The notes under the pieces: model-generated
Told to the model about the DNA's origin: nothing
Seen by the model: the letters and a program-made list of their open reading frames with translations, nothing else
Database searches by the model: none
Part shown: positions 27,102 to 51,195 of the stretch, one piece after another
Position numbering within the stretch: the stretch's first letter is position 1
Layout of the letters: each line of letters opens with the position of its first letter
Origin: Iphione sp. A-MEVVRFRX5
Lineage: Eukaryota
Reading direction: 5' to 3'
Assembly: GCA_976226885.1 (NCBI GenBank)
Contig: OZ320317.1
Coordinates: forward strand, 70,866,001 to 70,930,000
Length of the DNA stretch: 64,000 nucleotides
Program-made: the position numbers and the translations under genes

Positions 27102-40685
<13,584 letters not shown>

Positions 40686-43350
40686 GTGAACACGAAGCAA
40701 ATCTCTTGAAGCAACCATGGCAGTGAGATATCTTACGAACGTTTTAGCTAGTCCGTGGAACTGATATTGAAATTAAGGTTCCTACAACCCCCCATCTTTG
40801 TAACTGTATGAAAGTGGCCTCTATAATGATACGTCTCAGGAAGTCTCATGGGCCAACACTCATCTAGAGTCTTGTCTATGGCACTGTTTCAAAACAGTTG
40901 CTTTTACAACGATGCATCGTTAACATATGCATGTGAATCTGGCCTTGTCAGTGGAATCTAAAACAGTTCTTCACTATGGTCGATCTCACTCAGCGCCAGA
41001 CAGTGGAACGAATATCAAAGCAGATGTTGATCTCAGCATTCTGCTATCTTTCGTTTGTGGGTCGTCACATGTACGATTACACTGTATACCATGAAAAGAT
41101 TGAAAAGATGTCAGAAGGTTGAAATACCACACTCCTCCGCTCAGTGCTAATAAATGCGTTCTTACTGCTATGTTGCTTCTAGAGTGACATGTTATTTCAG
41201 CTCTACTGGAAAGTAAACGGGGGCGCTTCTTGAAGAGGCGCAGAGAAAAGAAATGAGACACTCTTGAATCTGGCAACGTTCGACTTGCATTAGAAAATAC
41301 ATGTAACCTTAATGCGATGATGGAATAACCCACTCTCGAATTCACACGTTTGACATTGCATCTTTACCACTTTGCTATTTTCATAAGGTGAACTTACATA
41401 TTGCAGTAATTTTGCTGTAATTATTGAATAATTGATATTTGCTGACCTGTCTTCGTAAACTATTCAAGAAAGTATATTTATCCGAATTAGATGTTAATCA
41501 AATCAATCCGTTTTTAGGGGTATCATAATAAATCCAAATTTGGAGTATTATCTGAAACTTTCGACTTTCCTTCCCTCAGGAGCCCTCTTCTGCCAAGTGA
41601 TTCCTCTACACACGTGCGCCCAATAATTACAATAATTCGACAGTCCTATAAAATATTTTTTCTTTTATTTTGCATAATCTATCACTATGTTAAAGTTACA
41701 TGACATACGACAAAACGTAACTATCAGCCAAGGGGCACTAAGGAAAAAAACGACGCCGTTGTGCGTCCGTAGGTACACGTGGTACATAGCACATTTTTCA
41801 TAGCAACAAGCGAGGAGTGGGCGCGAAGGAGTGCTCTCTTATCATATCATACCAAAACGAAAAGCAACGCGAGGGTGATAGATAAAAAAAAGAAACAAAA
41901 GGGTATACAACGGTCAAGTGCAATCTGTTGACCTGCGAAAAGGAAAAAAAATCAAGGTGTGACTAGTGTCAGCACATGAAAAAGCTTCTGTATCACCATC
42001 GATTCGCCGAGTCATTCTCCCTGCCATACGAGTTGGATGGGATCATAGAAGGACGTCAGAAACTTCTTTGTAAAATCTCTCTGTAAAAAGAAATCAAGTG
42101 GAGGGGGGGGGGGTTAATTAAAAAGAAAAATGTAATCCCACTAACGTAGAGGCGGTCACAGATACGAAGTCAACAAAATTTGACACGATGGTAAGTACGT
42201 TTTAACGATGAAAACAAAAAGCAAACTGCAAGCACTTTTTTCTTTTTGAAAAAGTGCGAATTGCGCTAATAAAAAATCCGGCACATTGCTCCAATTTGGG
42301 CACGACAAAGTTTTCACCACTGCCATTCCATCTCAGATATCTTAAAATTTTCTTGAAGTGACTTATCCGGGTCAGACATGTTTGAAACTTCTCCTTTCAG
42401 CACTGGAGATGGTTAAAACTGGCCGCCTCTGTTATAAAATGAGCATTCTGAATGAGTATAGCATTCACAACCGCTTTTTTCATGGAGATACCACGAAAAA
42501 GACATCCAAACAAAAACTCAGTTAACATAAAACAAAATAGCAGTCAATTATTTGTCAAACAAGTACAAAAAAACTAATGAGTTCTGGGAATAACCCAAAT
42601 ACGATGTAATAACGAAGAAGGAACAGAACAGAGCAAGGCCTAAATGAACTTTTTTTTTTGCCAATAATATACGTGCGCATATATGGTAGGGATACCTGAG
42701 CACATCTACTAGCAACACCTGAAAGTAGTTTGTAATTATGGTACTTTGTATTTTCGTGTCAATTTTGCTTAGTCAAAGTATCATCCACACTAAGTTACGT
42801 TGTACGTAACAAATGAAACGGAAGTTGGTTTCTTTAGGGGGGCATTCTAACAACAAATGCTGCTGCCTTTTCAACGTGGTTCGAAAATGACAATGAACAG
42901 TACATGCACCAGTTTAACCTGCGGGCAGGATCTGTCGAACTTGTAACTACACAACAATCATAGTCTGCATATACATCAATACAAACACATTCCCCTAAGA
43001 CCATTCCAAGCGACGACTCCATGAAGATTTTCCCTCTAACATGTGGCTCCAGCGCTAACAGAGGACAATCTAGCACGATAAAAGCACTCACAAGTTTGTG
43101 TGTGTAAATATATACATGTATTCGTAATGTCTTGTCCATGATTAAAAACAAAAAGGAAAGAGCGGACTAAAGTATGTGTCTTTGCTTTATAATACAAGGG
43201 TTATTTTTAAGACTTGTCTCTGTAAAGGACTATATGACACTGATGTGCTGCCACTCGGTCGGCTGGTATGCTGCCTAGTGGACAAACCAGCATGGTTTGG
43301 GTTGGGTCTGTCCGGAGAGAGACTGCTGGCAGCAGGACTATGTATCCACC

Positions 43351-46300
43351 TCACTTTTTCCTACCACGTGGCTTTGGTGCTGGTGCGGAGCGCTGTTTCT
43401 TGGCAGCAGGTGTCTCCACCATGGGCCGTTGTGGGATCTTGTCACTCATGTCTGTCCCTGAATCAGAGTTATAATGGCTGTCACCCTGCTTCTTTGCTGC
43501 CGGTGTTCGTACCCGGCCTGAGGGTATTGGTTGGGACTTCCTATGGGGACTTCGTGCTGGTGAGGTCTCTGATGATGGCCGTGCACGGTCACCCCCACGG
43601 GAGCGGGAAGGTGTTGGTTTGTATCCATCTACAACTTTGGGACCTTCATCCATGTCGGAGGCATCAGAGGAGCTGTCACGATAGTTTGGCTTTTTGTAAG
43701 TTTTGCTCTGAGAGCGTCTGTTGGTTGCCTGTGTGGATTTTGCTGAAGGTTTCGATTTGTTGCTGTGAAGTGGAACCCGCCTGGGTGCTCGCATGTCACT
43801 GCTTGAGTCCTCATCAGAGCTGTCTGTGGGCTTACTGGAGCGTGGGGTCCTTTTTGCAGGTGGCTTCCTGGGTTGTGCTGCTGGTGCAGGTGCTGCTGCT
43901 GCTGTTGAACGTCCCTTCGGCTTCTTCCCTCCTGAGGCAGCTTTGGCCCTGCTCTGTGCAGGAGCCTTCCTCTTGTTGCTTCTCTTTGGTGGTGCTGCCT
44001 CTACACTTGAGGCTTCACTGGAACTCTCACTTGATTCTTCTTCCTCTTCTGATGAGGATTCATCTGAACTATCTGAATCTGCATGGCGACCCCGCTTTCG
44101 GGCGGCACGTATGGCCTGACGATGTGCCTTTCGTTTGGGCTTTCGCTTGATCTCCTCAGTCACCTCTACTGGAGGCTTCGCATGCACTGCCTTGATACGG
44201 GCCATACCACGGCGCCGTGAAGGACGGGGCTTGTATTTGTCTCCATAGCCACTGAAGTCATATGATTCAACAGCCTCTGAATCGGATGATTCCGATTCAG
44301 AGACCTCATAGTCACTGGGGGTGTCCTGACCTGCGAGGATGAGGGGTGAGGGGCAAAACTGCTTTACCAACTGGAAGGTTCCCGAGGCCCCTATACCGGA
44401 GAGCTGCCTGTAGACAGTGGAAAGAGGTACAACGGGTCACTGGTTGTAATGAAGATAAGACCATGACTGATTTACATGTACCAGTATTCAGTGCACAACA
44501 TTAGTCTCATACGGTATGCTGAAATATCCTTAGATGCCTAGCATCTTTCCATATCTCGTTTCAATACACACTTAAAAAGCTCTACTGACGTCCTAGTCAA
44601 AGCCAAGATTAAAGACACTACAAAGCGACAAAAAGTAGTAATATTACAAACTACAAGTGCATGCTTCTTAATATGTCAGTTATTTTCTGGTCGATACAGA
44701 AAACATGGTGCTGAAGGTACAATTTTGAAAATGATTACCTATTTGGCTGATAACCCTATGAACTGCCCTAACATAGCTTTCCTCTGTCCACAGGATTTAT
44801 AGAGAGGATAACAAATTGTCTTATAAAAGGCTTCTCTAGCTTTGTTCCATCGCAACAAAACCGCTTTGCTGAAAGAATCTCATCTTAATCGATACAAGTA
44901 CTTATCTTTTACAATAGTACCATTATTAGTTCGCAAAATATGGTTATGGTCAGTATTCCATGGAAAACATTTTTTTACTTTGCCTGGAGAAGGCCTAACG
45001 GCCGAAAGCTTGCAGATTACACCCTTAAGAATATCAAAGCCACCTTTTCTTCAAGTAGTTGTGATGTTTTCCTTTCACTTTCTTTTTTATAAATCGAAAT
45101 AGGTCAGAGGTGCGTCAGCAAAGAAATCTTGTATCTTACTTGATTTCCTGGTTCACCACTGCCCGCTCGAGAGCCTTCTTGAAGAGTTGAGGCCTTTCTT
45201 CCACCTTGAACCTGTCTGAGTACCACTCAACCACGTACTTCTTGAGCAGATTGGCCGAGCACATCTTGGGCTCAGTACATGCCATGATGGCGTTGATAAC
45301 CATGCCAGTCATGTCCTCATCTGGAAGGAAACAAGAATTGTGCTGAAAAAGTACTGGTTCAAAGATGTTTTTCCTCTCTAACTAGGTCTCCTGGCTTACA
45401 AAATACACAAGATGAACGGTATTCTCTATACCATGGGTTAACAAGGGAAATTATTACAAGCGTGTATAAATCAGAAAAAGCCAGTGTTAAGAACTTAGTA
45501 ACAAAGACATTTCTATGTTATGGTGTCGACTTATGGAACACGTTGGCTGACGGTGCCAAGAAACTACCAAGTGAGCAGAGTGTAAAGAAAGCATTGAATG
45601 ATTGGAAAGTATAATCATGTAAAACTTTATTGCTGAAGAACCCATCACAGGTTAAAGCAGATCCAAAAGTGGCCATCTGGTGGCAAGGATGGAAACACAC
45701 AATACATTGAGAAAGGGCCATTATGTGGCAACAGTAAATGCAAACATGTACTAAAAAGAAAAAAAATGTACACTAGACTAACAGGAAAAGTCTGACTATA
45801 GGAACTAAACTAAGATAGCGCTCATAGGATGTACGGTAAACTACAGCATTTAAAGTATCAGATCTTGTTTGGAATGCATGGTGAGCCCCCCCCCCCCAAA
45901 AAAAAAGGTGTGTTTCTGGTAATCCACCCCTACCTAGTGAAACCTCACCCTACCTAAAAATTGTTTGGCCCCAAAGAGTTTCCAAGGCTGAATTTCCTTA
46001 GATATGTATTTTCATGGTGCATGTCTTTGGTAAATTCAGTAGAAAAACAACAAAATCCATGGAAATTCACAAAAAACTGTAAAACTTATACAGATTGGTC
46101 AAAATTCTTGATATTGCCTTTATTATTATTGAAAACCAGAGGAAGAAACTGGAAAAAAAATCTAAAAAAAAGACAGAAAAGTCTCTACCAATGCGACCTT
46201 CAGATGTCATGAGGAACAAAAATTTCACTTCATTTGAAAGGTTAATGAAATTTTAACCACTTTTGCAGGCAGAGGCATAGAGAGTGGCCTGGTCACTTTG

Positions 46301-49300
46301 GTAGGCTGAGCAGATAGTCAAGAGGTGGACTTTGTTTTCCACTCTACCGTTGTTGCACATGACATTATGTTTGGGTACACTGCTTTATTGTAATGTCACA
46401 TTTTGAAAAGCTTGATCTTTTGTATAAAGAGAACTGACAATATATCATATCATAGATCACTTCCCGAATTTATGCGATGTATTCCATTCACAGAGTTTAA
46501 TGAACACAATTTCCAATAAAACAGTGAAATAATAAACGGTTGCTTCAGTTTCTATAAAACAGGAACACACATAGAGACTTGGTTTAAAAACAAAGAAAAC
46601 ATGTAAAAGCTAATAACTTTGTGACAATGCGTGAGCGCGTTATTGTACTTACCATCGGTTGGGTCAAAAGAGTCAACTTCCAGGCGAAAGCGCCCAGAGT
46701 TGGCAGAGCTACCAGAAACCTGCTCCCAATATCCTTTTTCTTTGCCTGCTTCGAGACAACGTCCTAGTCTGCATACAAAGAAAACATCTGTATATTAAAG
46801 GACCCAGTCCTCATGAACGAAATATGCAACAAAATAATACTAACAATCGGCTGCAATAGTCCCCGGCCCCTTCCAAAGATATACTAAGTCTGATATGCAA
46901 TGGATTTATCAAAATTATTACAGTTTGAGGCTTCAGAGGTGGCTACCAAAATTTAATTATACAACAAACAGTAAGGAAATATCACCACATCTTCAATTTT
47001 AGCAACAAGCGAGGTGTTTCTTATATGATAATACTTAAACACCATAAAATATAATTTTCATATACAATCTGGACCAGTTGTTTTCTGCTGCAATACATGT
47101 GCACACATTGATTTCTCTAGAGAAACACTACGCAGCCACTGAGAATGGGAAAAAAATTATACCTTTCGACATTGGTGTCTGGGTAGTTCTCTGCGACATA
47201 TTTCTTAATCCGAATAACTGATGCCTCTTTGGGTTCAGACATGAACGTCATGGCCAAGTAAAATGTGTCCTCAAGGCGGCTTGGGTTGCCATGGTGGATG
47301 AAGCGGTTCTGCGGCCGACTTGACCCTGTAGGATTGCAAAGGCAAGAACTCTCAAGTACAAGATGAGACAGCAAGTAAAGGTTAATATAGACACAGGACC
47401 TGAGCATATACATATATGTACTGGATGTGAACAAACACAAATCCAAAATAAAACCAAACGTGAACGGTGTATGTGTATATGGATCAAGAATCAAATCGTA
47501 CACGGATATACATGTACATGTATACGGCCCAAAATAAGAGTAAACATGAGTGCATTTAGATCCAAGGCAAGGACAGGTACAACAGCTAAAACAGGTTAAT
47601 TTAGATGAAGGATAGGAGCAAATGTAATTACAGTTATATGATGGTACATTTCAGTTATGACAACAATTACATATATCATATGTCACCACAGTAATAGTAG
47701 TTTTGAGGCAAATAATACATGGAAGAAGAAAAACAAAGCTTACTTTTCTTTGCCTTCTTTGCAGGAGTTGCTTTTTGGTCTGTTCCATTTTTGTCTTCAT
47801 CCTTCTTTTCTTCCTTCTCCTTACCCTCTTCTGCGCTCTCCTCTGCCGACTAAATTGAAGAAGGGTTTAATACTAAACTAGGGGAGGATGCAGCTGTAAG
47901 TTGCAATATGGAGATCAGGCACCCTGCAGCTATCCTATCCTCTACCTCACTGCCAATAGCCGTGCTAACCCCTCCGTGACCACCTACAGCTATGCTATCC
48001 CCTCCCTGACTGCCTACGGGCGTGCTAACACCTCCCTGGCGACCTATGACCATGCTAACCCCTCCCTGGCCATTTATGGCCTTGCTTAACCCTCCCTGGC
48101 CACTTATGGGCTTGTTAATCCTCCATGGCTGTCTGTAGCCGCCCTAACCCTTGCTGACTACCTACAGCCATCCTACCCCCTCCCTCGCTGCCTACAGCCA
48201 TCCTATCAACTACCTAACTGCCGAAAACTGTCCTCCTCTCTCCCTAGCTGCATACAGCCAGCTGACCACAACCTGCAGACCCACCAGGAACATGCAGTAG
48301 GTCCAGCTGCCACACCCCACAAGTCCCACCAGCCAATAGCAGCCGATCCGATGTAATCCCCATTTTCACCAGCTGGGCAATGAAAGACTGGTTCGTGACA
48401 GGTACACTTGTCAGGGCCCTTTCACAGGTGTAACAAACGTCTGTATACATGTATTGAGTCGACCCTCTCTAATCGACAAAGCAACCAACAAAATGCATTT
48501 ATCCACAATGTTGGAAGGGAACTAGCTGTCCGATATTAACTGTGGCTTGTTTCATCAACCAATAAAATTTATGCAAATGACAATATTACAAGCGATGGCA
48601 GCTTGTTGGATACAAGCGGTTAACCGTATACTTTTATCTGACAAGCATACAACCTTAATTTAATGTGTCTGGATGGACAAATGCACACATGTACCCACTT
48701 TTTCTTCGTCTTTATCCTCCTTTTCGTTGTCGTCCTTATTATCCTTACTTTTCTCATTGGTATGTACAGGTTTCACATCTTCGTCTCCAACAAAGCGGCG
48801 ATAGAAACCGCACTTTCCGATACCACGCTCCTTAAATGCAAATTTGTATTGAAAACATTTCTTCCAGTTTGCCTAAACTACGAAAATAAATCAAACCGGA
48901 ACACAAGTTTATCCCTTGGGAAATCCTCTGAATTTCACTTGTTGAGGGCCCAACTCATAAACCTTTAACGAAATTTAAACTTGATAATGGTCTCAATATA
49001 AGTAGTGTTAAAAAGATACAATCCTTTTAAAACAACTGTTTATCAGATATGGGTGCGGAACATCATTTGATGTACCCGCTGAGGTTATATATCTCAGCAA
49101 CAGATTAAAGAGATGTTATTATGGCACGTACGCAGACGAGGTAGCCAAAACGTATGCCTCTCTGTAATGCAGCCAGCAACACCTTGGGCCGCAGTTCGAT
49201 TCGAAGTGCGGGGTACTTTCCAGCGATGTAAGTAAGTAGTTTATTGAACCGAATACCTCCAGCCTTGTCACTCGTCAAGGGTAATCAATTCATGAGTGCG

Positions 49301-50575
49301 ATTTTCATGTTTTTTTCTGTAGATTGAAATCATCACTGAAACAAGCACAACAGGAAAAGGAAAATCTTGACTACAAGCAAAGGATACAGGGTTGCCCATA
49401 TCATTTAGTGAATTTTCAATGATATCACGGATTTTAAGGGTAAGTGTGTCCGCTTTGACTTTGGGCTCCTTCTTCTTGACCTTCTTTTCTTTTACACGGT
49501 GCGCCAGAGGGGAACCTTCTTTAAAAGTGTAGCCAGTGGGAAACTTCTGTCGAATTATCTGTGAGAAGAACAACATTAAGTTATTGACTTCATGAAAGAT
49601 TACGATATGTGGACTATCTGGCCTTTAAAAAAAATCTTATCGATAAATGCAATGTACATAGGTAGTATCTACAGGGTGTCAGATATGAGGGGAAACTGAA
49701 CCTTGAACAAGCTGAAACTTTCATTAGTCTTTCAACGCAAACATAGATGCTAGTATTATCCCCAGCAGGACTACCTATCTTGATACAAGCCAGGACTGAC
49801 TACCGTATTCCTAGGCCATCAACAGCTTAATTTACCTTGTTGAAAAAGACTTGTTCCACTGCCGTGGAAGCTTCCGCAACACATTTTTCCAAGTACAAGG
49901 TATACACTTCGCCCAAGGGCAACTTCACTTCAGATTTTTCTTCAAAGTGTTCTGCGATCCTTTTGTGGAGCGGGAGAAGGAGAAAAACTTGTATCAATAA
50001 CAATTTAATTTCCACCGAAATAAAATATTTACAAGCAATTGGAAGATCTAGCACAGCAAAGTATAACAGTAAAATATTGACTGAAATTATCAATCTTATC
50101 TCAGATTATTGTCTCAGATTACATAGCCGTTACACCGAGTATTGGCCACGTGTATGTACGAAAATGAACTCGTTTACACACTCGTTTTCGTTCCCTCTGT
50201 AACTGGCAGTCAGACAACCTCTACACTTTAAACTTTATAAATTGTCTGAGCTTCACTGAACATTACCCATGTTGGACTGGGCTTTGAGCATGGATTCAAA
50301 TAATCGGCAAACTTAGACAAAGCTTTGAGAAAATGAAATATTTACCAATCTTGGACTGAGCTTTCCGGGGTATAGACTAGTCGTTTTCGCTTTCCTTCAA
50401 CTGTGGTGACATCAAAGATGTTGAAATGTTTCTTTTTGACGGGTAGTTCTGGTTCATCTTCAGGTTCAGGGGTGGGCTCTATGGATTCCCTTTTATCCTC
50501 TACTTTCTCATTATTTTCCATATTGTCAGTTCGTGCTGCCTTCGATTTCTTCGGTGGCATCATTTTGATAGACAT
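43351..50575 (-). CDS. HP1BP3: HP1BP3-like linker-histone protein: N-terminal RFX-like winged helix, three H15 globular domains, long basic low-complexity tail
   Basis: Exons (minus): 50575-50346, 49959-49836, 49558-49388, 49263-49132, 48830-48699, 47849-47744, 47325-47163, 46768-46653, 45320-45140, 44407-43351, all in phase. HP1BP3-type signatures: KYPALRIELRPKVLLAALQRG; LEDTFYLAMTFMSEPKEASVIRIKKYV; AIMACTEPKMCSANLLKKYV...RPQLFKKALERAV...QLSGIGASGTFQLVKQFCPSP. Confidence 0.88.
47915..48260. repeat. 30-bp minisatellite, about 11-12 degenerate copies (CACCTACAGCCATGCTAACCCCTCCCTGGC-like)
   Basis: Read directly; it explains the spurious 10-aa-repeat ORFs 47901..48089 and 47850..48053. Confidence 0.9.
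49264..49387 (-). other. U12-type (minor spliceosome) GT-AG intron in the HP1BP3-like gene
   Basis: 5' splice site GTATCCTTT; branch site CCTTGAC at 49280-49274 with the A about 11 nt from the 3' AG; no polypyrimidine tract. Confidence 0.85.
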
Positions 50576-51037
50576 TCAAACTCCTTTGAAGTGAACCTGA
50601 TAAGGAAACGAAGAGGGACAAGTTAACCCGTGTGCATGCATTTAAGAGCTTAGCGAGCGTAACTAAGTGAGACTGACAGAGAGTTAGTACGATATGCCCC
50701 CCTTTATAATTTTCAATGCTATTAAGTAGATCTTTGCTTCTATAAGCATACCTCTCTAAACGAATCCCCTTGAAACGAAACTATTTTTATAAGTTGGCAA
50801 TTTTTGTAGACTTTGTGGCCGGGTGCGACATTTTAAAGCCCATTTTGTAAAGAATAACCGAAAATGTAAGGGACAAAATGCATACATTTAGTTCCTCAAC
50901 TGTTAATTGTTTATTAGGAAAAAATAAATACAAATTTATGCCAATGTACCTCTGATAACTACGTTTCCTACAATGAAGTGATATGGCAGACAGAAGAAGT
51001 CAAAGTACAAACAATTTAACTGTTTTCAGCCTGAGAA

Positions 51038-51195
51038 CTGACCACCACGATGCCTCATGTTGACCACCATGATGGCTCATACTGTCCACCATGATGGCTC
51101 AAGTTAAGCGTCATGATGACTCACACTGACCACCATGATGGCCCATGCTGACTGTCATGATGGCTCATAGTGACTATCTGTTTGGCTCATGTTCA
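51038..51195. repeat. 22-bp tandem repeat, about 7 copies (TGACCACCATGATGGCTCATAC)
   Basis: Read directly. Confidence 0.9.

What the first reader, a model, noticed from the sequence alone, without database searches (positions are those of the whole stretch)
49388..50400. HP1BP3-like linker histone with an extra N-terminal RFX-type winged-helix domain
Before the first H15 domain the spliced protein reads VQDWIAEHFEEKSEVKLPLGEVYTLYLEKCVAEASTAVEQVFFNKIIRQKFPTGY. This fits the RFX/ARID2-type winged-helix pattern (W...F/YE....LP...Y..Y...C......V....F.K.IR..F). The RFX-specific DNA-contacting wing (RRLGTRG) is not evident. As I recall it, vertebrate HP1BP3 has only three H15 domains and a disordered N-terminus. 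An RFX-like WH plus 3xH15 plus a roughly 340-aa basic tail would be an unusual four-winged-helix chromatin protein, possibly an ancestral or lineage-specific form. The exons are seen in the sequence; the domain call is pattern recognition.
Basis: partly seen in the sequence, partly recalled or inferred. Interest (0 to 1): 0.72.

Follow-up and report, generated by a model that had tools for sequence, protein, structure and literature searches.

The report
RFX-type domain on triple linker histone
The window holds an intact ten-exon gene for a chromatin protein that joins a true RFX-type winged-helix domain to three linker-histone domains and a long basic tail. The layout is real, but it is shared by many molluscs, a brachiopod and an annelid, is already partly machine-annotated, and is missing from the vertebrate counterpart HP1BP3.

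Summary
On the minus strand, 50575-43351, ten GT-AG exons give one open frame of 799-803 aa. Between a basic/acidic N-terminus and the first H15 domain lies the quoted peptide.

**RFX-type domain**
- It matches Pfam RFX_DNA_binding above the curated cut-off (37 vs 27 bits).
- A family profile hits RFX5, RFX1 and ARID2 among solved structures.
- The AlphaFold model's two best structural matches are RFX5 and RFX1 (Z 8.5 and 7.0; next 5.0).
- Exon 2 (124 nt) has the same boundaries, intron phases and length as the DNA-binding-domain exon of canonical RFX genes in this genome. This points to descent from an RFX gene.

**Distribution**
- The layout is not peculiar to this genome. Kin of 35-43% identity with RFX + 2-3 H15 domains occur in gastropods, bivalves, cephalopods, Lingula and Owenia.
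- Most named entries are called "HP1BP3-like", and about a quarter to a third already carry the RFX Pfam tag.
- The four fish HP1BP3 tested lack the domain.
- I found no paper describing the fusion.

**Function (inferred)**
- The arginine-rich RFX wing is gone and the domain core is charge-neutral.
- I infer a low-specificity DNA or nucleosome contact, at about even odds.

No RNA data were listed.

The parts
50346..50575 (-). Exon 1: start codon (50575, or 50563 for the MMPPKK start), basic/acidic N-terminus, conserved KRKR motif, and the first residues of the RFX-type domain up to two bases of the Trp codon
   Evidence: ORF and donor GATTG|GTAAAT; aligns with the N-termini of P0001 and P0075
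49836..49959 (-). Exon 2, 124 nt: helices H1-H2 and the start of H3 of the RFX-type winged helix
   Evidence: Pfam PF02257 profile positions 8-48; same boundaries, phases and length as the DBD exon of RFX genes L005, L006 and L007; conserved exon in a relative's genomic contig L010
49388..49558 (-). Exon 3: rest of H3 (IIRQKFP), degenerate wing (TGYTFKEGS...), lysine-rich linker, and first helix of H15 domain 1
   Evidence: the weak donor CCT|GTATCC is conserved as CCA|GTATCC in L010; strongest own-genome hit of profile A2
49493..50355 (-). Span of the RFX-type winged-helix domain (about 70 residues, interrupted by introns 1 and 2)
   Evidence: AlphaFold model with pLDDT 85-90 over residues 11-70; best structural matches are RFX5 and RFX1
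49132..49263 (-). Exon 4: middle of H15 domain 1
   Evidence: homologous exon in L010
48699..48830 (-). Exon 5: end of H15 domain 1 (ERGIGKCGFYRR) and start of the acidic/basic linker
47744..47849 (-). Exon 6: Glu/Lys-rich linker
47163..47325 (-). Exon 7: first part of H15 domain 2
46653..46768 (-). Exon 8: second part of H15 domain 2
   Evidence: spliced domain 34.3 bits
45140..45320 (-). Exon 9: most of H15 domain 3
   Evidence: Pfam Linker_histone, 31.6 bits
43351..44407 (-). Exon 10: end of H15 domain 3 (QLSGIGASGTFQL), 338-aa Ser/Pro/Ala/Lys/Arg-rich stretch and stop codon

Best explanation
Shown (about 0.9): the window carries the single-copy orthologue of a lophotrochozoan 'HP1BP3-like' gene. 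Its product of about 800 aa has four parts. First comes a short charged N-terminus with a KRKR motif. Second comes a winged helix homologous to the DNA-binding domain of RFX transcription factors. Third come three linker-histone (H15) globular domains. Last comes a long basic tail. The RFX-type module most likely came from a canonical RFX gene, because it keeps that gene's exon boundaries.

Inferred (about 0.5): the protein is a nuclear architectural chromatin protein that binds nucleosomes and linker DNA through its H15 domains and tail, as H1 and HP1BP3 do. The RFX-type domain, with the lysine-rich stretches on both sides of it, would add a fourth contact to DNA or the nucleosome with little or no sequence preference. 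It keeps the basic residues of helix 3 and a few wing positions. It has lost the arginine-rich wing that reads the X-box.
For: **Gene model**
- Ten GT-AG exons with one open frame.
- It is colinear with full-length relatives.
- An uninterrupted 900-aa ORF lies on a 3.8-kb Logan contig of a relative, apparently a transcript; it carries the RFX-type and H15 domains.
- Exons 2-4 and their splice sites are conserved in a relative's genomic contig while the introns are not.

**RFX identity**
- Pfam gives 37 bits against a cut-off of 27.
- The family profile hits RFX5 (5.7e-6), RFX1 (2e-4) and ARID2 (3e-4) among solved structures.
- The AlphaFold model has H1-S1-H2-H3-hairpin order.
- Its top two Foldseek matches are RFX5 and RFX1, both with probability 1.00. 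VIA-align gives Z 8.5 and 7.0 against 5.0 for the next match.
- The window domain is 22/58 identical to this genome's own RFX domains.
- Exon 2 has the same phase-2 split of the Trp codon, the same phase-0 end after F-x-K, and the same 124-nt length as in L005, L006 and L007.

**Family**
- All ten full-length relatives scanned have RFX + 2-3 H15 matches, except one with a single H15 match.
- Named ones are molluscs, Lingula and Owenia.
- Only one locus of this type exists in this genome.

**Link to HP1BP3**
- The family profile hits fish HP1BP3 at 1e-44.
- The flank of H15 domain 2 is shared.

**Mechanism**
- Positions that I map to RFX1 K45, R48, R57 and R62 are K/R in most members.
- S65 is invariant and Y67 is mostly Y.
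- The flanks carry about +3.5 charge each.
- A PBAF cryo-EM preprint suggests ARID2's RFX-like domain may account for a density on extranucleosomal DNA.
- A solved RFX5 complex is nucleosome-bound, going by the entry title.
Against: - No RNA from this species was available, so the junctions are predicted.
- The weak exon 3 donor GTATCC rests on conservation in one relative.
- The RFX-type core has net charge 0 to -1 here and -1.2 on average in the family. The genome's RFX factors have +3 to +10. A neutral core is unusual for a DNA-binding surface.
- The position of RFX1 R19 is Leu. In this particular protein the positions of R57 and Y67 are Thr and Leu.
- Pfam aligns only profile positions 4-56 of 79, and the wing is modelled at lower confidence.
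- My mapping of the nine RFX1 contact residues is inferred. It uses a verbal description in PMC2533330 together with RFX5 and RFX7 sequences recalled from memory. I did not check it on coordinates.
- H15 domain 1 is below Pfam's cut-off in this protein.
Confidence: 0.55

Rival explanations
1. The RFX-type winged helix has become a protein-protein interaction or scaffold module, with no direct DNA contact. Chromatin binding is left to the H15 domains, the lysine-rich linkers and the tail.
For: The domain core is neutral to acidic (0 here, family mean -1.2) while true RFX domains of the same genome are +3 to +10. The arginine-rich wing RRLGTRG is replaced, and a conserved Glu sits in the hairpin (K-E-x-S). 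Winged helices often serve as protein-binding modules (general knowledge).
Against: Basic residues persist at the positions of RFX1 K45, R48, R57 and R62 in most members, and S65 is invariant. This is hard to explain if the DNA face were released from constraint. The domain is bracketed by conserved basic stretches.
Confidence: 0.3
2. The domain still reads a specific DNA motif (X-box-like or a new one). It would make this a sequence-targeted linker histone that delivers H1-type compaction to chosen sites.
For: Homology to the RFX DNA-binding domain, including gene structure. Conservation of several contact positions over a deep divergence between phyla.
Against: Most Arg are replaced by Lys or lost, and the position of R19 is Leu. 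The wing, which makes the major-groove contacts in RFX1 (PMC2533330, citing Gajiwala et al. 2000), is the least conserved part and fails to align to the Pfam profile beyond position 56.
Confidence: 0.1
3. The RFX-like exons belong to a separate upstream gene or are a chance ORF, and the fusion is an artefact of reading exons together.
For: No RNA evidence from this species. One weak donor site (GTATCC).
Against: Phases fit across all nine introns. More than 30 relatives carry the same N-terminal region on one polypeptide with the H15 domains. These include ORFs on short intron-free Logan contigs, apparently transcripts. Exon 3 itself encodes both the end of the RFX-type domain and the first helix of H15 domain 1. 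The weak donor is conserved in a relative.
Confidence: 0.03

Closest known systems
[quoted passage not shown] 2015, PMC4344522)
   Same: Three tandem H15 globular domains followed by an acidic patch and a long basic tail. The profile of the lophotrochozoan family hits fish HP1BP3 at E 1e-44. The flank and first helix of H15 domain 2 (L-x-D...EPKEAS...KKY) are shared.
   Different: The vertebrate N-terminal domain is about 100 aa, glutamate-rich and described as unstructured (PMC4344522). The four fish proteins scanned give no RFX match in Pfam at E up to 1, and one of them (P0080) gave only 0.6% probability against profile A2. The window protein has an RFX-type winged helix there and a tail about three times longer. 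No PxVxL motif precedes H15 domain 2 here, but the fish proteins in hand lack it too.
DNA-binding domain of RFX transcription factors (Pfam PF02257; structures 1DP7 RFX1-X-box, 8ZJR RFX5)
   Same: Sequence profile above the cut-off. Same fold: rmsd 1.7-1.8 A over 59-65 residues, 27-31% identity. Same intron positions and phases, and the same 124-nt exon, as RFX genes of this genome. Identical IIRQ-FP stretch in helix 3.
   Different: The wing motif T-R-R-L-G-T-R-G is replaced by T-G-Y-T-F-K-E-G. The core is not basic. None of the other RFX domains (dimerisation, B, C) was seen. It is fused to linker-histone domains.
RFX-like domain of ARID2 (PBAF remodeller; structures 7VDV, 7Y8R)
   Same: An RFX-type winged helix embedded in a chromatin protein that is not a classical transcription factor. 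It is hit by the family profile at E 3e-4. A PBAF structure preprint suggests it may account for an unassigned density on extranucleosomal DNA (10.1101/2022.05.20.492795).
   Different: The window domain is closer to canonical RFX domains than to this genome's ARID2-like one (36.5 vs 16.8 bits). It shares both exon boundaries with canonical RFX genes, while the ARID2-like gene shares only the first.
Public lophotrochozoan 'HP1BP3-like' / 'H15 domain-containing' entries (e.g. Lingula XP_013394716.1, Haliotis XP_046352492.1, Argopecten XP_069125140.1, Owenia CAH1775449.1)
   Same: Same layout and colinear alignment over the whole length. These are the true family of the window gene.
   Different: Only 35-43% identical. 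The window protein falls outside the molluscs, with Lingula, Owenia and unnamed transcriptome sequences. Its RFX-type domain scores higher against Pfam than any of the twenty relatives scanned (37 bits vs 17-36).

Membership tests
RFX DNA-binding domain (Pfam PF02257 / InterPro IPR003150) | Profile match at or above the curated gathering score | tested here: met
   37 bits vs cut-off 27, E 5.4e-9, profile positions 4-56 of 79. Most relatives score 17-36 bits, many below the cut-off.
RFX DNA-binding domain (Pfam PF02257 / InterPro IPR003150) | Winged-helix fold with H1-S1-H2-H3-S2-wing-S3 order, superposable on solved RFX domains | tested here: met
   AlphaFold2 with a 38-sequence alignment: pLDDT 85-90 over residues 11-70. 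Foldseek's top two matches are 8zjr_M and 1dp7_P (prob 1.00, TM 0.67/0.65). VIA-align gives Z 8.5 and 7.0; the next match is 5.0. The wing is modelled with lower confidence.
RFX DNA-binding domain (Pfam PF02257 / InterPro IPR003150) | Arginine-rich wing (R-R-L-G-T-R-G) and the set of DNA-contact residues kept in RFX1-7 | tested here: not met
   The wing is replaced. Of the positions I could map, K45, R48, R62 (as Lys) and S65 are kept here, while R19, R57, R58, K66 and Y67 are not. The mapping is inferred from PMC2533330 and recalled sequences.
RFX DNA-binding domain (Pfam PF02257 / InterPro IPR003150) | Common descent with RFX genes (shared gene structure) | tested here: met
   Exon 2 has the same acceptor (phase 2 in the Trp codon), the same donor (phase 0 after F-x-K) and the same 124-nt length as in L005, L006 and L007.
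RFX DNA-binding domain (Pfam PF02257 / InterPro IPR003150) | Binding to the X-box motif | not testable with these tools
   Needs gel shift, SELEX or a protein-binding microarray.
HP1BP3 / tri-globular H1-related proteins | Three H15 (Linker_histone, PF00538) domains in tandem | tested here: met
   Domain 2 scores 34.3 bits and domain 3 scores 31.6 bits, both over the cut-off of 22.4. Domain 1 scores 15.9 bits, under the cut-off, but spans profile positions 3-71. The orthologous first domain of P0001 is that protein's best Pfam H15 stretch (residues 147-218).
HP1BP3 / tri-globular H1-related proteins | Long basic, low-complexity C-terminal tail | tested here: met
   338 aa after H15 domain 3, with 74 K+R against 43 D+E, rich in Ser, Pro and Ala.
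HP1BP3 / tri-globular H1-related proteins | Sequence homology to vertebrate HP1BP3 beyond a generic H15 match | tested here: met
   The family profile hits fish HP1BP3 at E 1e-44 to 1e-25. The flank of H15 domain 2 is shared. Orthology, as opposed to independent triplication, was not tested by a tree that includes H1 proteins.
HP1BP3 / tri-globular H1-related proteins | HP1 binding through a PxVxL motif before H15 domain 2 (mouse V257; PMC4344522) | tested here: inconclusive
   No such motif at that place in the window protein or its kin, but the four fish HP1BP3 proteins in hand lack it too. HP1 binding itself is not testable here.

The most novel reading that the evidence does not exclude
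Lophotrochozoans have a 'targeted linker histone'. An RFX DNA-binding exon set, captured from a canonical RFX gene, still reads a defined DNA motif and brings a tri-globular H1-like compaction module to specific sites. The fusion might be the ancestral bilaterian state that vertebrate HP1BP3 lost.
Probability: 0.1. Interest if true: 0.7.

Novelty: new member of a known kind. Interest (0 to 1): 0.4.

Why it matters
HP1BP3 is treated in the literature I could search as a vertebrate elaboration of histone H1 with an unstructured N-terminus (PMC4344522).

These data show three things:
- Tri-globular H1-related proteins are present across Lophotrochozoa.
- There they carry a fourth winged helix taken from the RFX transcription-factor family.
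- The exon structure still records that origin.

This is a clean example of domain shuffling between a sequence-specific factor and an architectural chromatin protein. It also yields a testable question: what does an RFX-type domain without its arginine wing do on a nucleosome?

It does not overturn anything. The proteins are already in public databases and some are tagged with both domains. For annotation, the practical point is that most family members fall just under Pfam's RFX cut-off, so the domain is missed in about two thirds of them.

Tried and rejected
**RNA evidence**
- No RNA run was listed for 44650-50640.

**Organism**
- It was not identified.
- Earlier notes on this genome speak only of a mollusc-type gene and a 'worm' dynein.
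- The run accessions of the nearest relatives occur in no searchable paper.
- The tree places the protein with Lingula, Owenia and unnamed sequences, at weak support.

**Kin outside Lophotrochozoa**
- The exhaustive single-sequence search gave 42 hits. All named full-length hits that carry H15 domains are lophotrochozoan. The named outsiders are a fish RFX7-like protein and a Zingiber protein.
- Three word-based searches added only lophotrochozoans and fish HP1BP3.
- The word searches are insensitive. The first was swamped by low-complexity words and did not even return Owenia. This is therefore no proof of absence in echinoderms, hemichordates, amphioxus, ecdysozoans or cnidarians.

**Weak hits not pursued**
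- Pfam Pox_D5 (E 0.01).
- Metagenomic proteins with four to eight weak repeats of a similar helix pattern (P0013, P0024, P0037, P0038).
- A Zingiber protein (P0036).
- Per-repeat scores are 2-12 bits.

**Other readings**
- The separate-gene and chance-ORF readings were rejected (see rival explanations).
- A hidden RFX remnant in the vertebrate N-terminus was rejected for the fish tested.
- PxVxL as a membership criterion was dropped because the fish HP1BP3 proteins lack it as well.
- No paralogue of the domain exists elsewhere in this genome.
Full report
**1. What is in the sequence**

The finding lies on the minus strand. Three-frame translation of 50620-43300 shows a chain of open segments. 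I joined them through canonical sites. The result is a ten-exon model:

| Exon | Coordinates |
|---|---|
| 1 | 50575 (or 50563)-50346 |
| 2 | 49959-49836 |
| 3 | 49558-49388 |
| 4 | 49263-49132 |
| 5 | 48830-48699 |
| 6 | 47849-47744 |
| 7 | 47325-47163 |
| 8 | 46768-46653 |
| 9 | 45320-45140 |
| 10 | 44407-43351 |

Every intron is GT-AG, and the phases fit. The joined frame of 2400 nt from the second ATG has a single stop at its end. It encodes 799 aa, or 803 aa from the first ATG, which follows an in-frame stop directly.

Exon 3 alone encodes both the end of the RFX-like region and the first helix of the first H15 domain. The two parts are therefore physically one coding unit.

**2. Support for the gene model without RNA**

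No RNA run was listed for this stretch, so the splicing is predicted. Three lines of evidence support it.

- tblastn of three full-length relatives lays all parts down colinearly on these exons.
- The nearest relative, P0075, is an uninterrupted 900-aa ORF on a 3775-nt Logan contig with flanks on both sides. The window gene has nine introns, so that contig is most simply a transcript. It carries the RFX-like and H15 parts on one ORF.
- A genomic contig of another relative (L010) contains homologues of exons 2, 3 and 4. The exons align well and the introns do not. Exon 2 again starts ag|G-ATC and ends before gtgagt. The one weak donor in my model (CCT|GTATCC) recurs there as CCA|GTATCC. Exon 4 starts one codon before the same G-G-x-R-F.

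**3. Is the N-terminal domain an RFX-type winged helix?**

*Sequence.* The spliced 114 aa match Pfam RFX_DNA_binding at E 5.4e-9 and 37 bits (curated cut-off 27), over profile positions 4-56 of 79. Exon 2 by itself gives E 0.0025. A profile of 38 family members (A2) finds the following among all solved structures, and nothing else below E 0.5:

| Structure | E-value |
|---|---|
| RFX5 | 5.7e-6 |
| RFX1 DNA-binding domain | 2e-4 |
| ARID2 | 3e-4 |

*Fold.* AlphaFold2 with that alignment gives mean pLDDT 74.8, with 85-90 over residues 11-70. The order is helix, short strand, helix, helix, then a hairpin.

- Foldseek's two best PDB matches are 8zjr_M (RFX5) and 1dp7_P (RFX1). Both have probability 1.00, TM 0.67 and 0.65, and rmsd 1.6-2.0 A. 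The E-values are weak (0.04-0.07), as expected for 76 residues.
- VIA-align gives Z 8.5 (65 residues, 1.8 A, 31% identity) and Z 7.0 (59 residues, 1.7 A, 27% identity). The next chain scores 5.0.

*Gene structure.* I looked at the RFX genes of the same genome. In three of them (L005, L006, L007) the exon for the first two thirds of the DNA-binding domain shares three properties with exon 2 of the window gene:

- It starts with the third base of the Trp codon (phase 2).
- It ends in phase 0 right after F-G-K.
- It is 124 nt long.

The next exon of L005 and L007 begins I-I-R-Q-x-F-P, as here. Other RFX-type genes differ:

- An ARID2-like gene (L008) shares only the first boundary.
- An RFX1-3-like gene (L003) shares neither.
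- An RFX5/7-like gene (L004) is split elsewhere.

The window domain is 22/58 identical to L005 and L001. The family profile scores L005 best (36.5 bits) and the ARID2-like domain near the bottom (16.8 bits; only the exon fragment of L006 scored lower). The subtype names are my reading of the motifs, not a tested classification. Together these results show homology with canonical RFX domains. They suggest that the module was captured from such a gene at the exon level.

**4. What the domain has lost and kept**

RFX factors read the X-box mainly with the wing in the major groove, while helix 3 touches the minor groove. Nine contact residues are almost invariant in RFX1-7 (PMC2533330, citing Gajiwala et al. 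2000). The figure marking them is not held. I inferred three of them (R19, K45, R48 of the 1DP7 numbering) from the paper's text together with RFX5 and RFX7 sequences that I recalled from memory. The others I took as candidates in the wing.

Positions were mapped through the HMMER alignment and counted over the 38 sequences:

| RFX1 position | Family (38 sequences) | This protein |
|---|---|---|
| R19 | mostly Leu | Leu |
| K45 | R/K in 37 | Lys |
| R48 | K/R in 31 | Arg |
| R57 | Lys in 33 | Thr |
| R58 | variable | Gly |
| R62 | Lys in 30 | Lys |
| S65 | invariant | Ser |
| K66 | variable | Pro |
| Y67 | Tyr in 26 | Leu |

The hairpin carries a conserved Glu. The domain core has net charge 0 here and -1.2 on average, against +3 to +10 for the genome's RFX factors. 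It is flanked by stretches of about +3.7 and +3.4.

This is the pattern of a DNA face that is still under some constraint but no longer built for base-specific reading.

**5. The rest of the protein**

- H15 domain 2 (spliced) scores 34.3 bits.
- The exon for H15 domain 3 scores 31.6 bits. The cut-off is 22.4.
- H15 domain 1 scores only 15.9 bits but spans profile positions 3-71. The orthologous first domain of P0001 is that protein's best Pfam H15 stretch.
- The stretch after domain 3 is 338 aa, rich in Ser, Pro, Ala, Lys and Arg, with net charge about +31.
- A conserved K-R-K-R precedes the RFX-type domain. That it acts as a nuclear localisation signal is my inference.

**6. Relatives and distribution**

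The exhaustive search of 1.84 billion representatives with the 114 aa gave 42 hits at E up to 1e-3. Eleven are full-length proteins of 540-820 aa, 30-42% identical over the whole query. All ten that I scanned have RFX_DNA_binding (18-31 bits, mostly under the cut-off) plus two or three Linker_histone matches; one has a single match.

Named members:

- Gastropods: Haliotis, Patella, Bulinus, Biomphalaria, Aplysia, Lymnaea, Elysia, Littorina, Pomacea, Batillaria, Arion, Plakobranchus.
- Bivalves: Argopecten, Pecten, Mizuhopecten, Ylistrum, Mactra, Ostrea, Saccostrea, Pinctada, Solemya, Tegillarca, Mytilus.
- Cephalopods: Octopus, Argonauta.
- The brachiopod Lingula and the annelid Owenia.

[quoted passage not shown] Nine of the 33 already have PF02257 precomputed next to PF00538. 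The layout is thus visible in public resources, but only for a minority, because most members fall just under the Pfam cut-off.

In a tree on 554 columns the window protein sits outside the molluscs, with Lingula, Owenia and unnamed transcriptome sequences. Support is weak, and its best identity is 43%. The species itself is not in the protein collection and I could not name it. The domain type occurs once in this genome.

**7. Vertebrates and the literature**

The family profile hits fish HP1BP3 at E 1e-44 to 1e-25. The flank and first helix of H15 domain 2 are recognisably the same in fish and in the window protein.

The four fish HP1BP3 scanned show no RFX match in Pfam at E up to 1. One of them (P0080) was also compared with the profile A2 and gave 0.6% probability. 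Their first H15 domain starts at residue 124-146.

Garfinkel et al. 2015 describe the human N-terminal domain as about 100 aa, glutamate-rich and unstructured. They present HP1BP3 as an addition to the vertebrate H1 family (PMC4344522).

Full-text searches for HP1BP3 with RFX, for the RFX domain with linker histone, and for HP1BP3 with invertebrate or H15 found no description of this fusion. I found no member outside Lophotrochozoa, but my searches cannot exclude one (see Tried and rejected).

**8. How it most likely works**

*Shown:* the gene, its domains, their homology and their conservation across three phyla.

*Inferred:* the product is a nuclear architectural protein that sits on nucleosomes and linker DNA through three H15 domains and a basic tail, as shown for H1 and mouse HP1BP3 (PMC4344522).

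For the RFX-type domain I judge a low-specificity contact to DNA or the nucleosome, made together with its lysine-rich flanks, to be the most likely role (about 0.5).

- The basic positions of helix 3 and the hairpin, and the invariant Ser, are kept.
- A PBAF structure preprint suggests that the RFX-like domain of ARID2 may account for an unassigned density on extranucleosomal DNA (10.1101/2022.05.20.492795).
- A solved RFX5 complex is nucleosome-bound, going by its entry title.

The main rival is a protein-binding role (about 0.3). The neutral core and the lost arginine wing favour it. Retained motif-specific targeting is possible but unlikely (about 0.1). An annotation artefact is close to excluded (about 0.03).

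**9. Verdict**

The added value here is the structural match, the shared exon structure with RFX genes, and the phyletic spread.

This is the local orthologue of a conserved lophotrochozoan family that public pipelines already name HP1BP3-like and sometimes tag with both domains. I file it as a new member of a known kind that has so far been described only by machine annotation. Interest is moderate.

Noticed in passing
window 47923-48222 (intron 5 of the gene) and 51037-51193 (about 460 bp upstream of the start codon): Two minisatellites. One has a 30-nt unit in about 9.5 copies (69% matches). The other has a 22/44-nt unit (ACTGACCACCATGATGGCTCAT) in about 7 copies. Both create long spurious ORFs in several frames.
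   Followed up: partly
window 33135-33689 (+): Open frame with a short-chain dehydrogenase match (adh_short 39 bits, adh_short_C2 33 bits). By eye it resembles a 2,4-dienoyl-CoA reductase exon. It is a neighbouring gene on the other strand.
   Followed up: partly
window 43176-44150 (+): A 324-aa ORF antisense to the last exon. It most likely comes from the biased composition of the Ser/Pro/Ala/Lys-coding tail and is not a gene.
   Followed up: no
window 4001-6000: A GC-rich island (54% against about 40% elsewhere in the window) with overlapping ORFs on both strands.
   Followed up: no
G000:C10:86599245-86599697 (L002/L003): Two RFX DNA-binding-domain matches lie only about 250 bp apart on the same strand, and one has two stop codons. 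This could be a tandem duplicate exon or a decayed copy in an RFX1-3-like gene.
   Followed up: no
proteins P0013, P0024, P0037, P0038 (metagenomic, 800-1060 aa): These proteins have four to eight weak repeats resembling the helix 1-helix 3 part of the domain (2-12 bits each). One carries the source name 'YozE (UPF0346)'. They may be arrays of a winged-helix-like repeat.
   Followed up: no
Pfam scores across the family: Of the twenty relatives with an RFX match that I scanned, thirteen score below the RFX_DNA_binding cut-off of 27 bits (17-27 bits). The domain therefore goes unannotated in most public entries, although the homology is clear with a family profile.
   Followed up: yes
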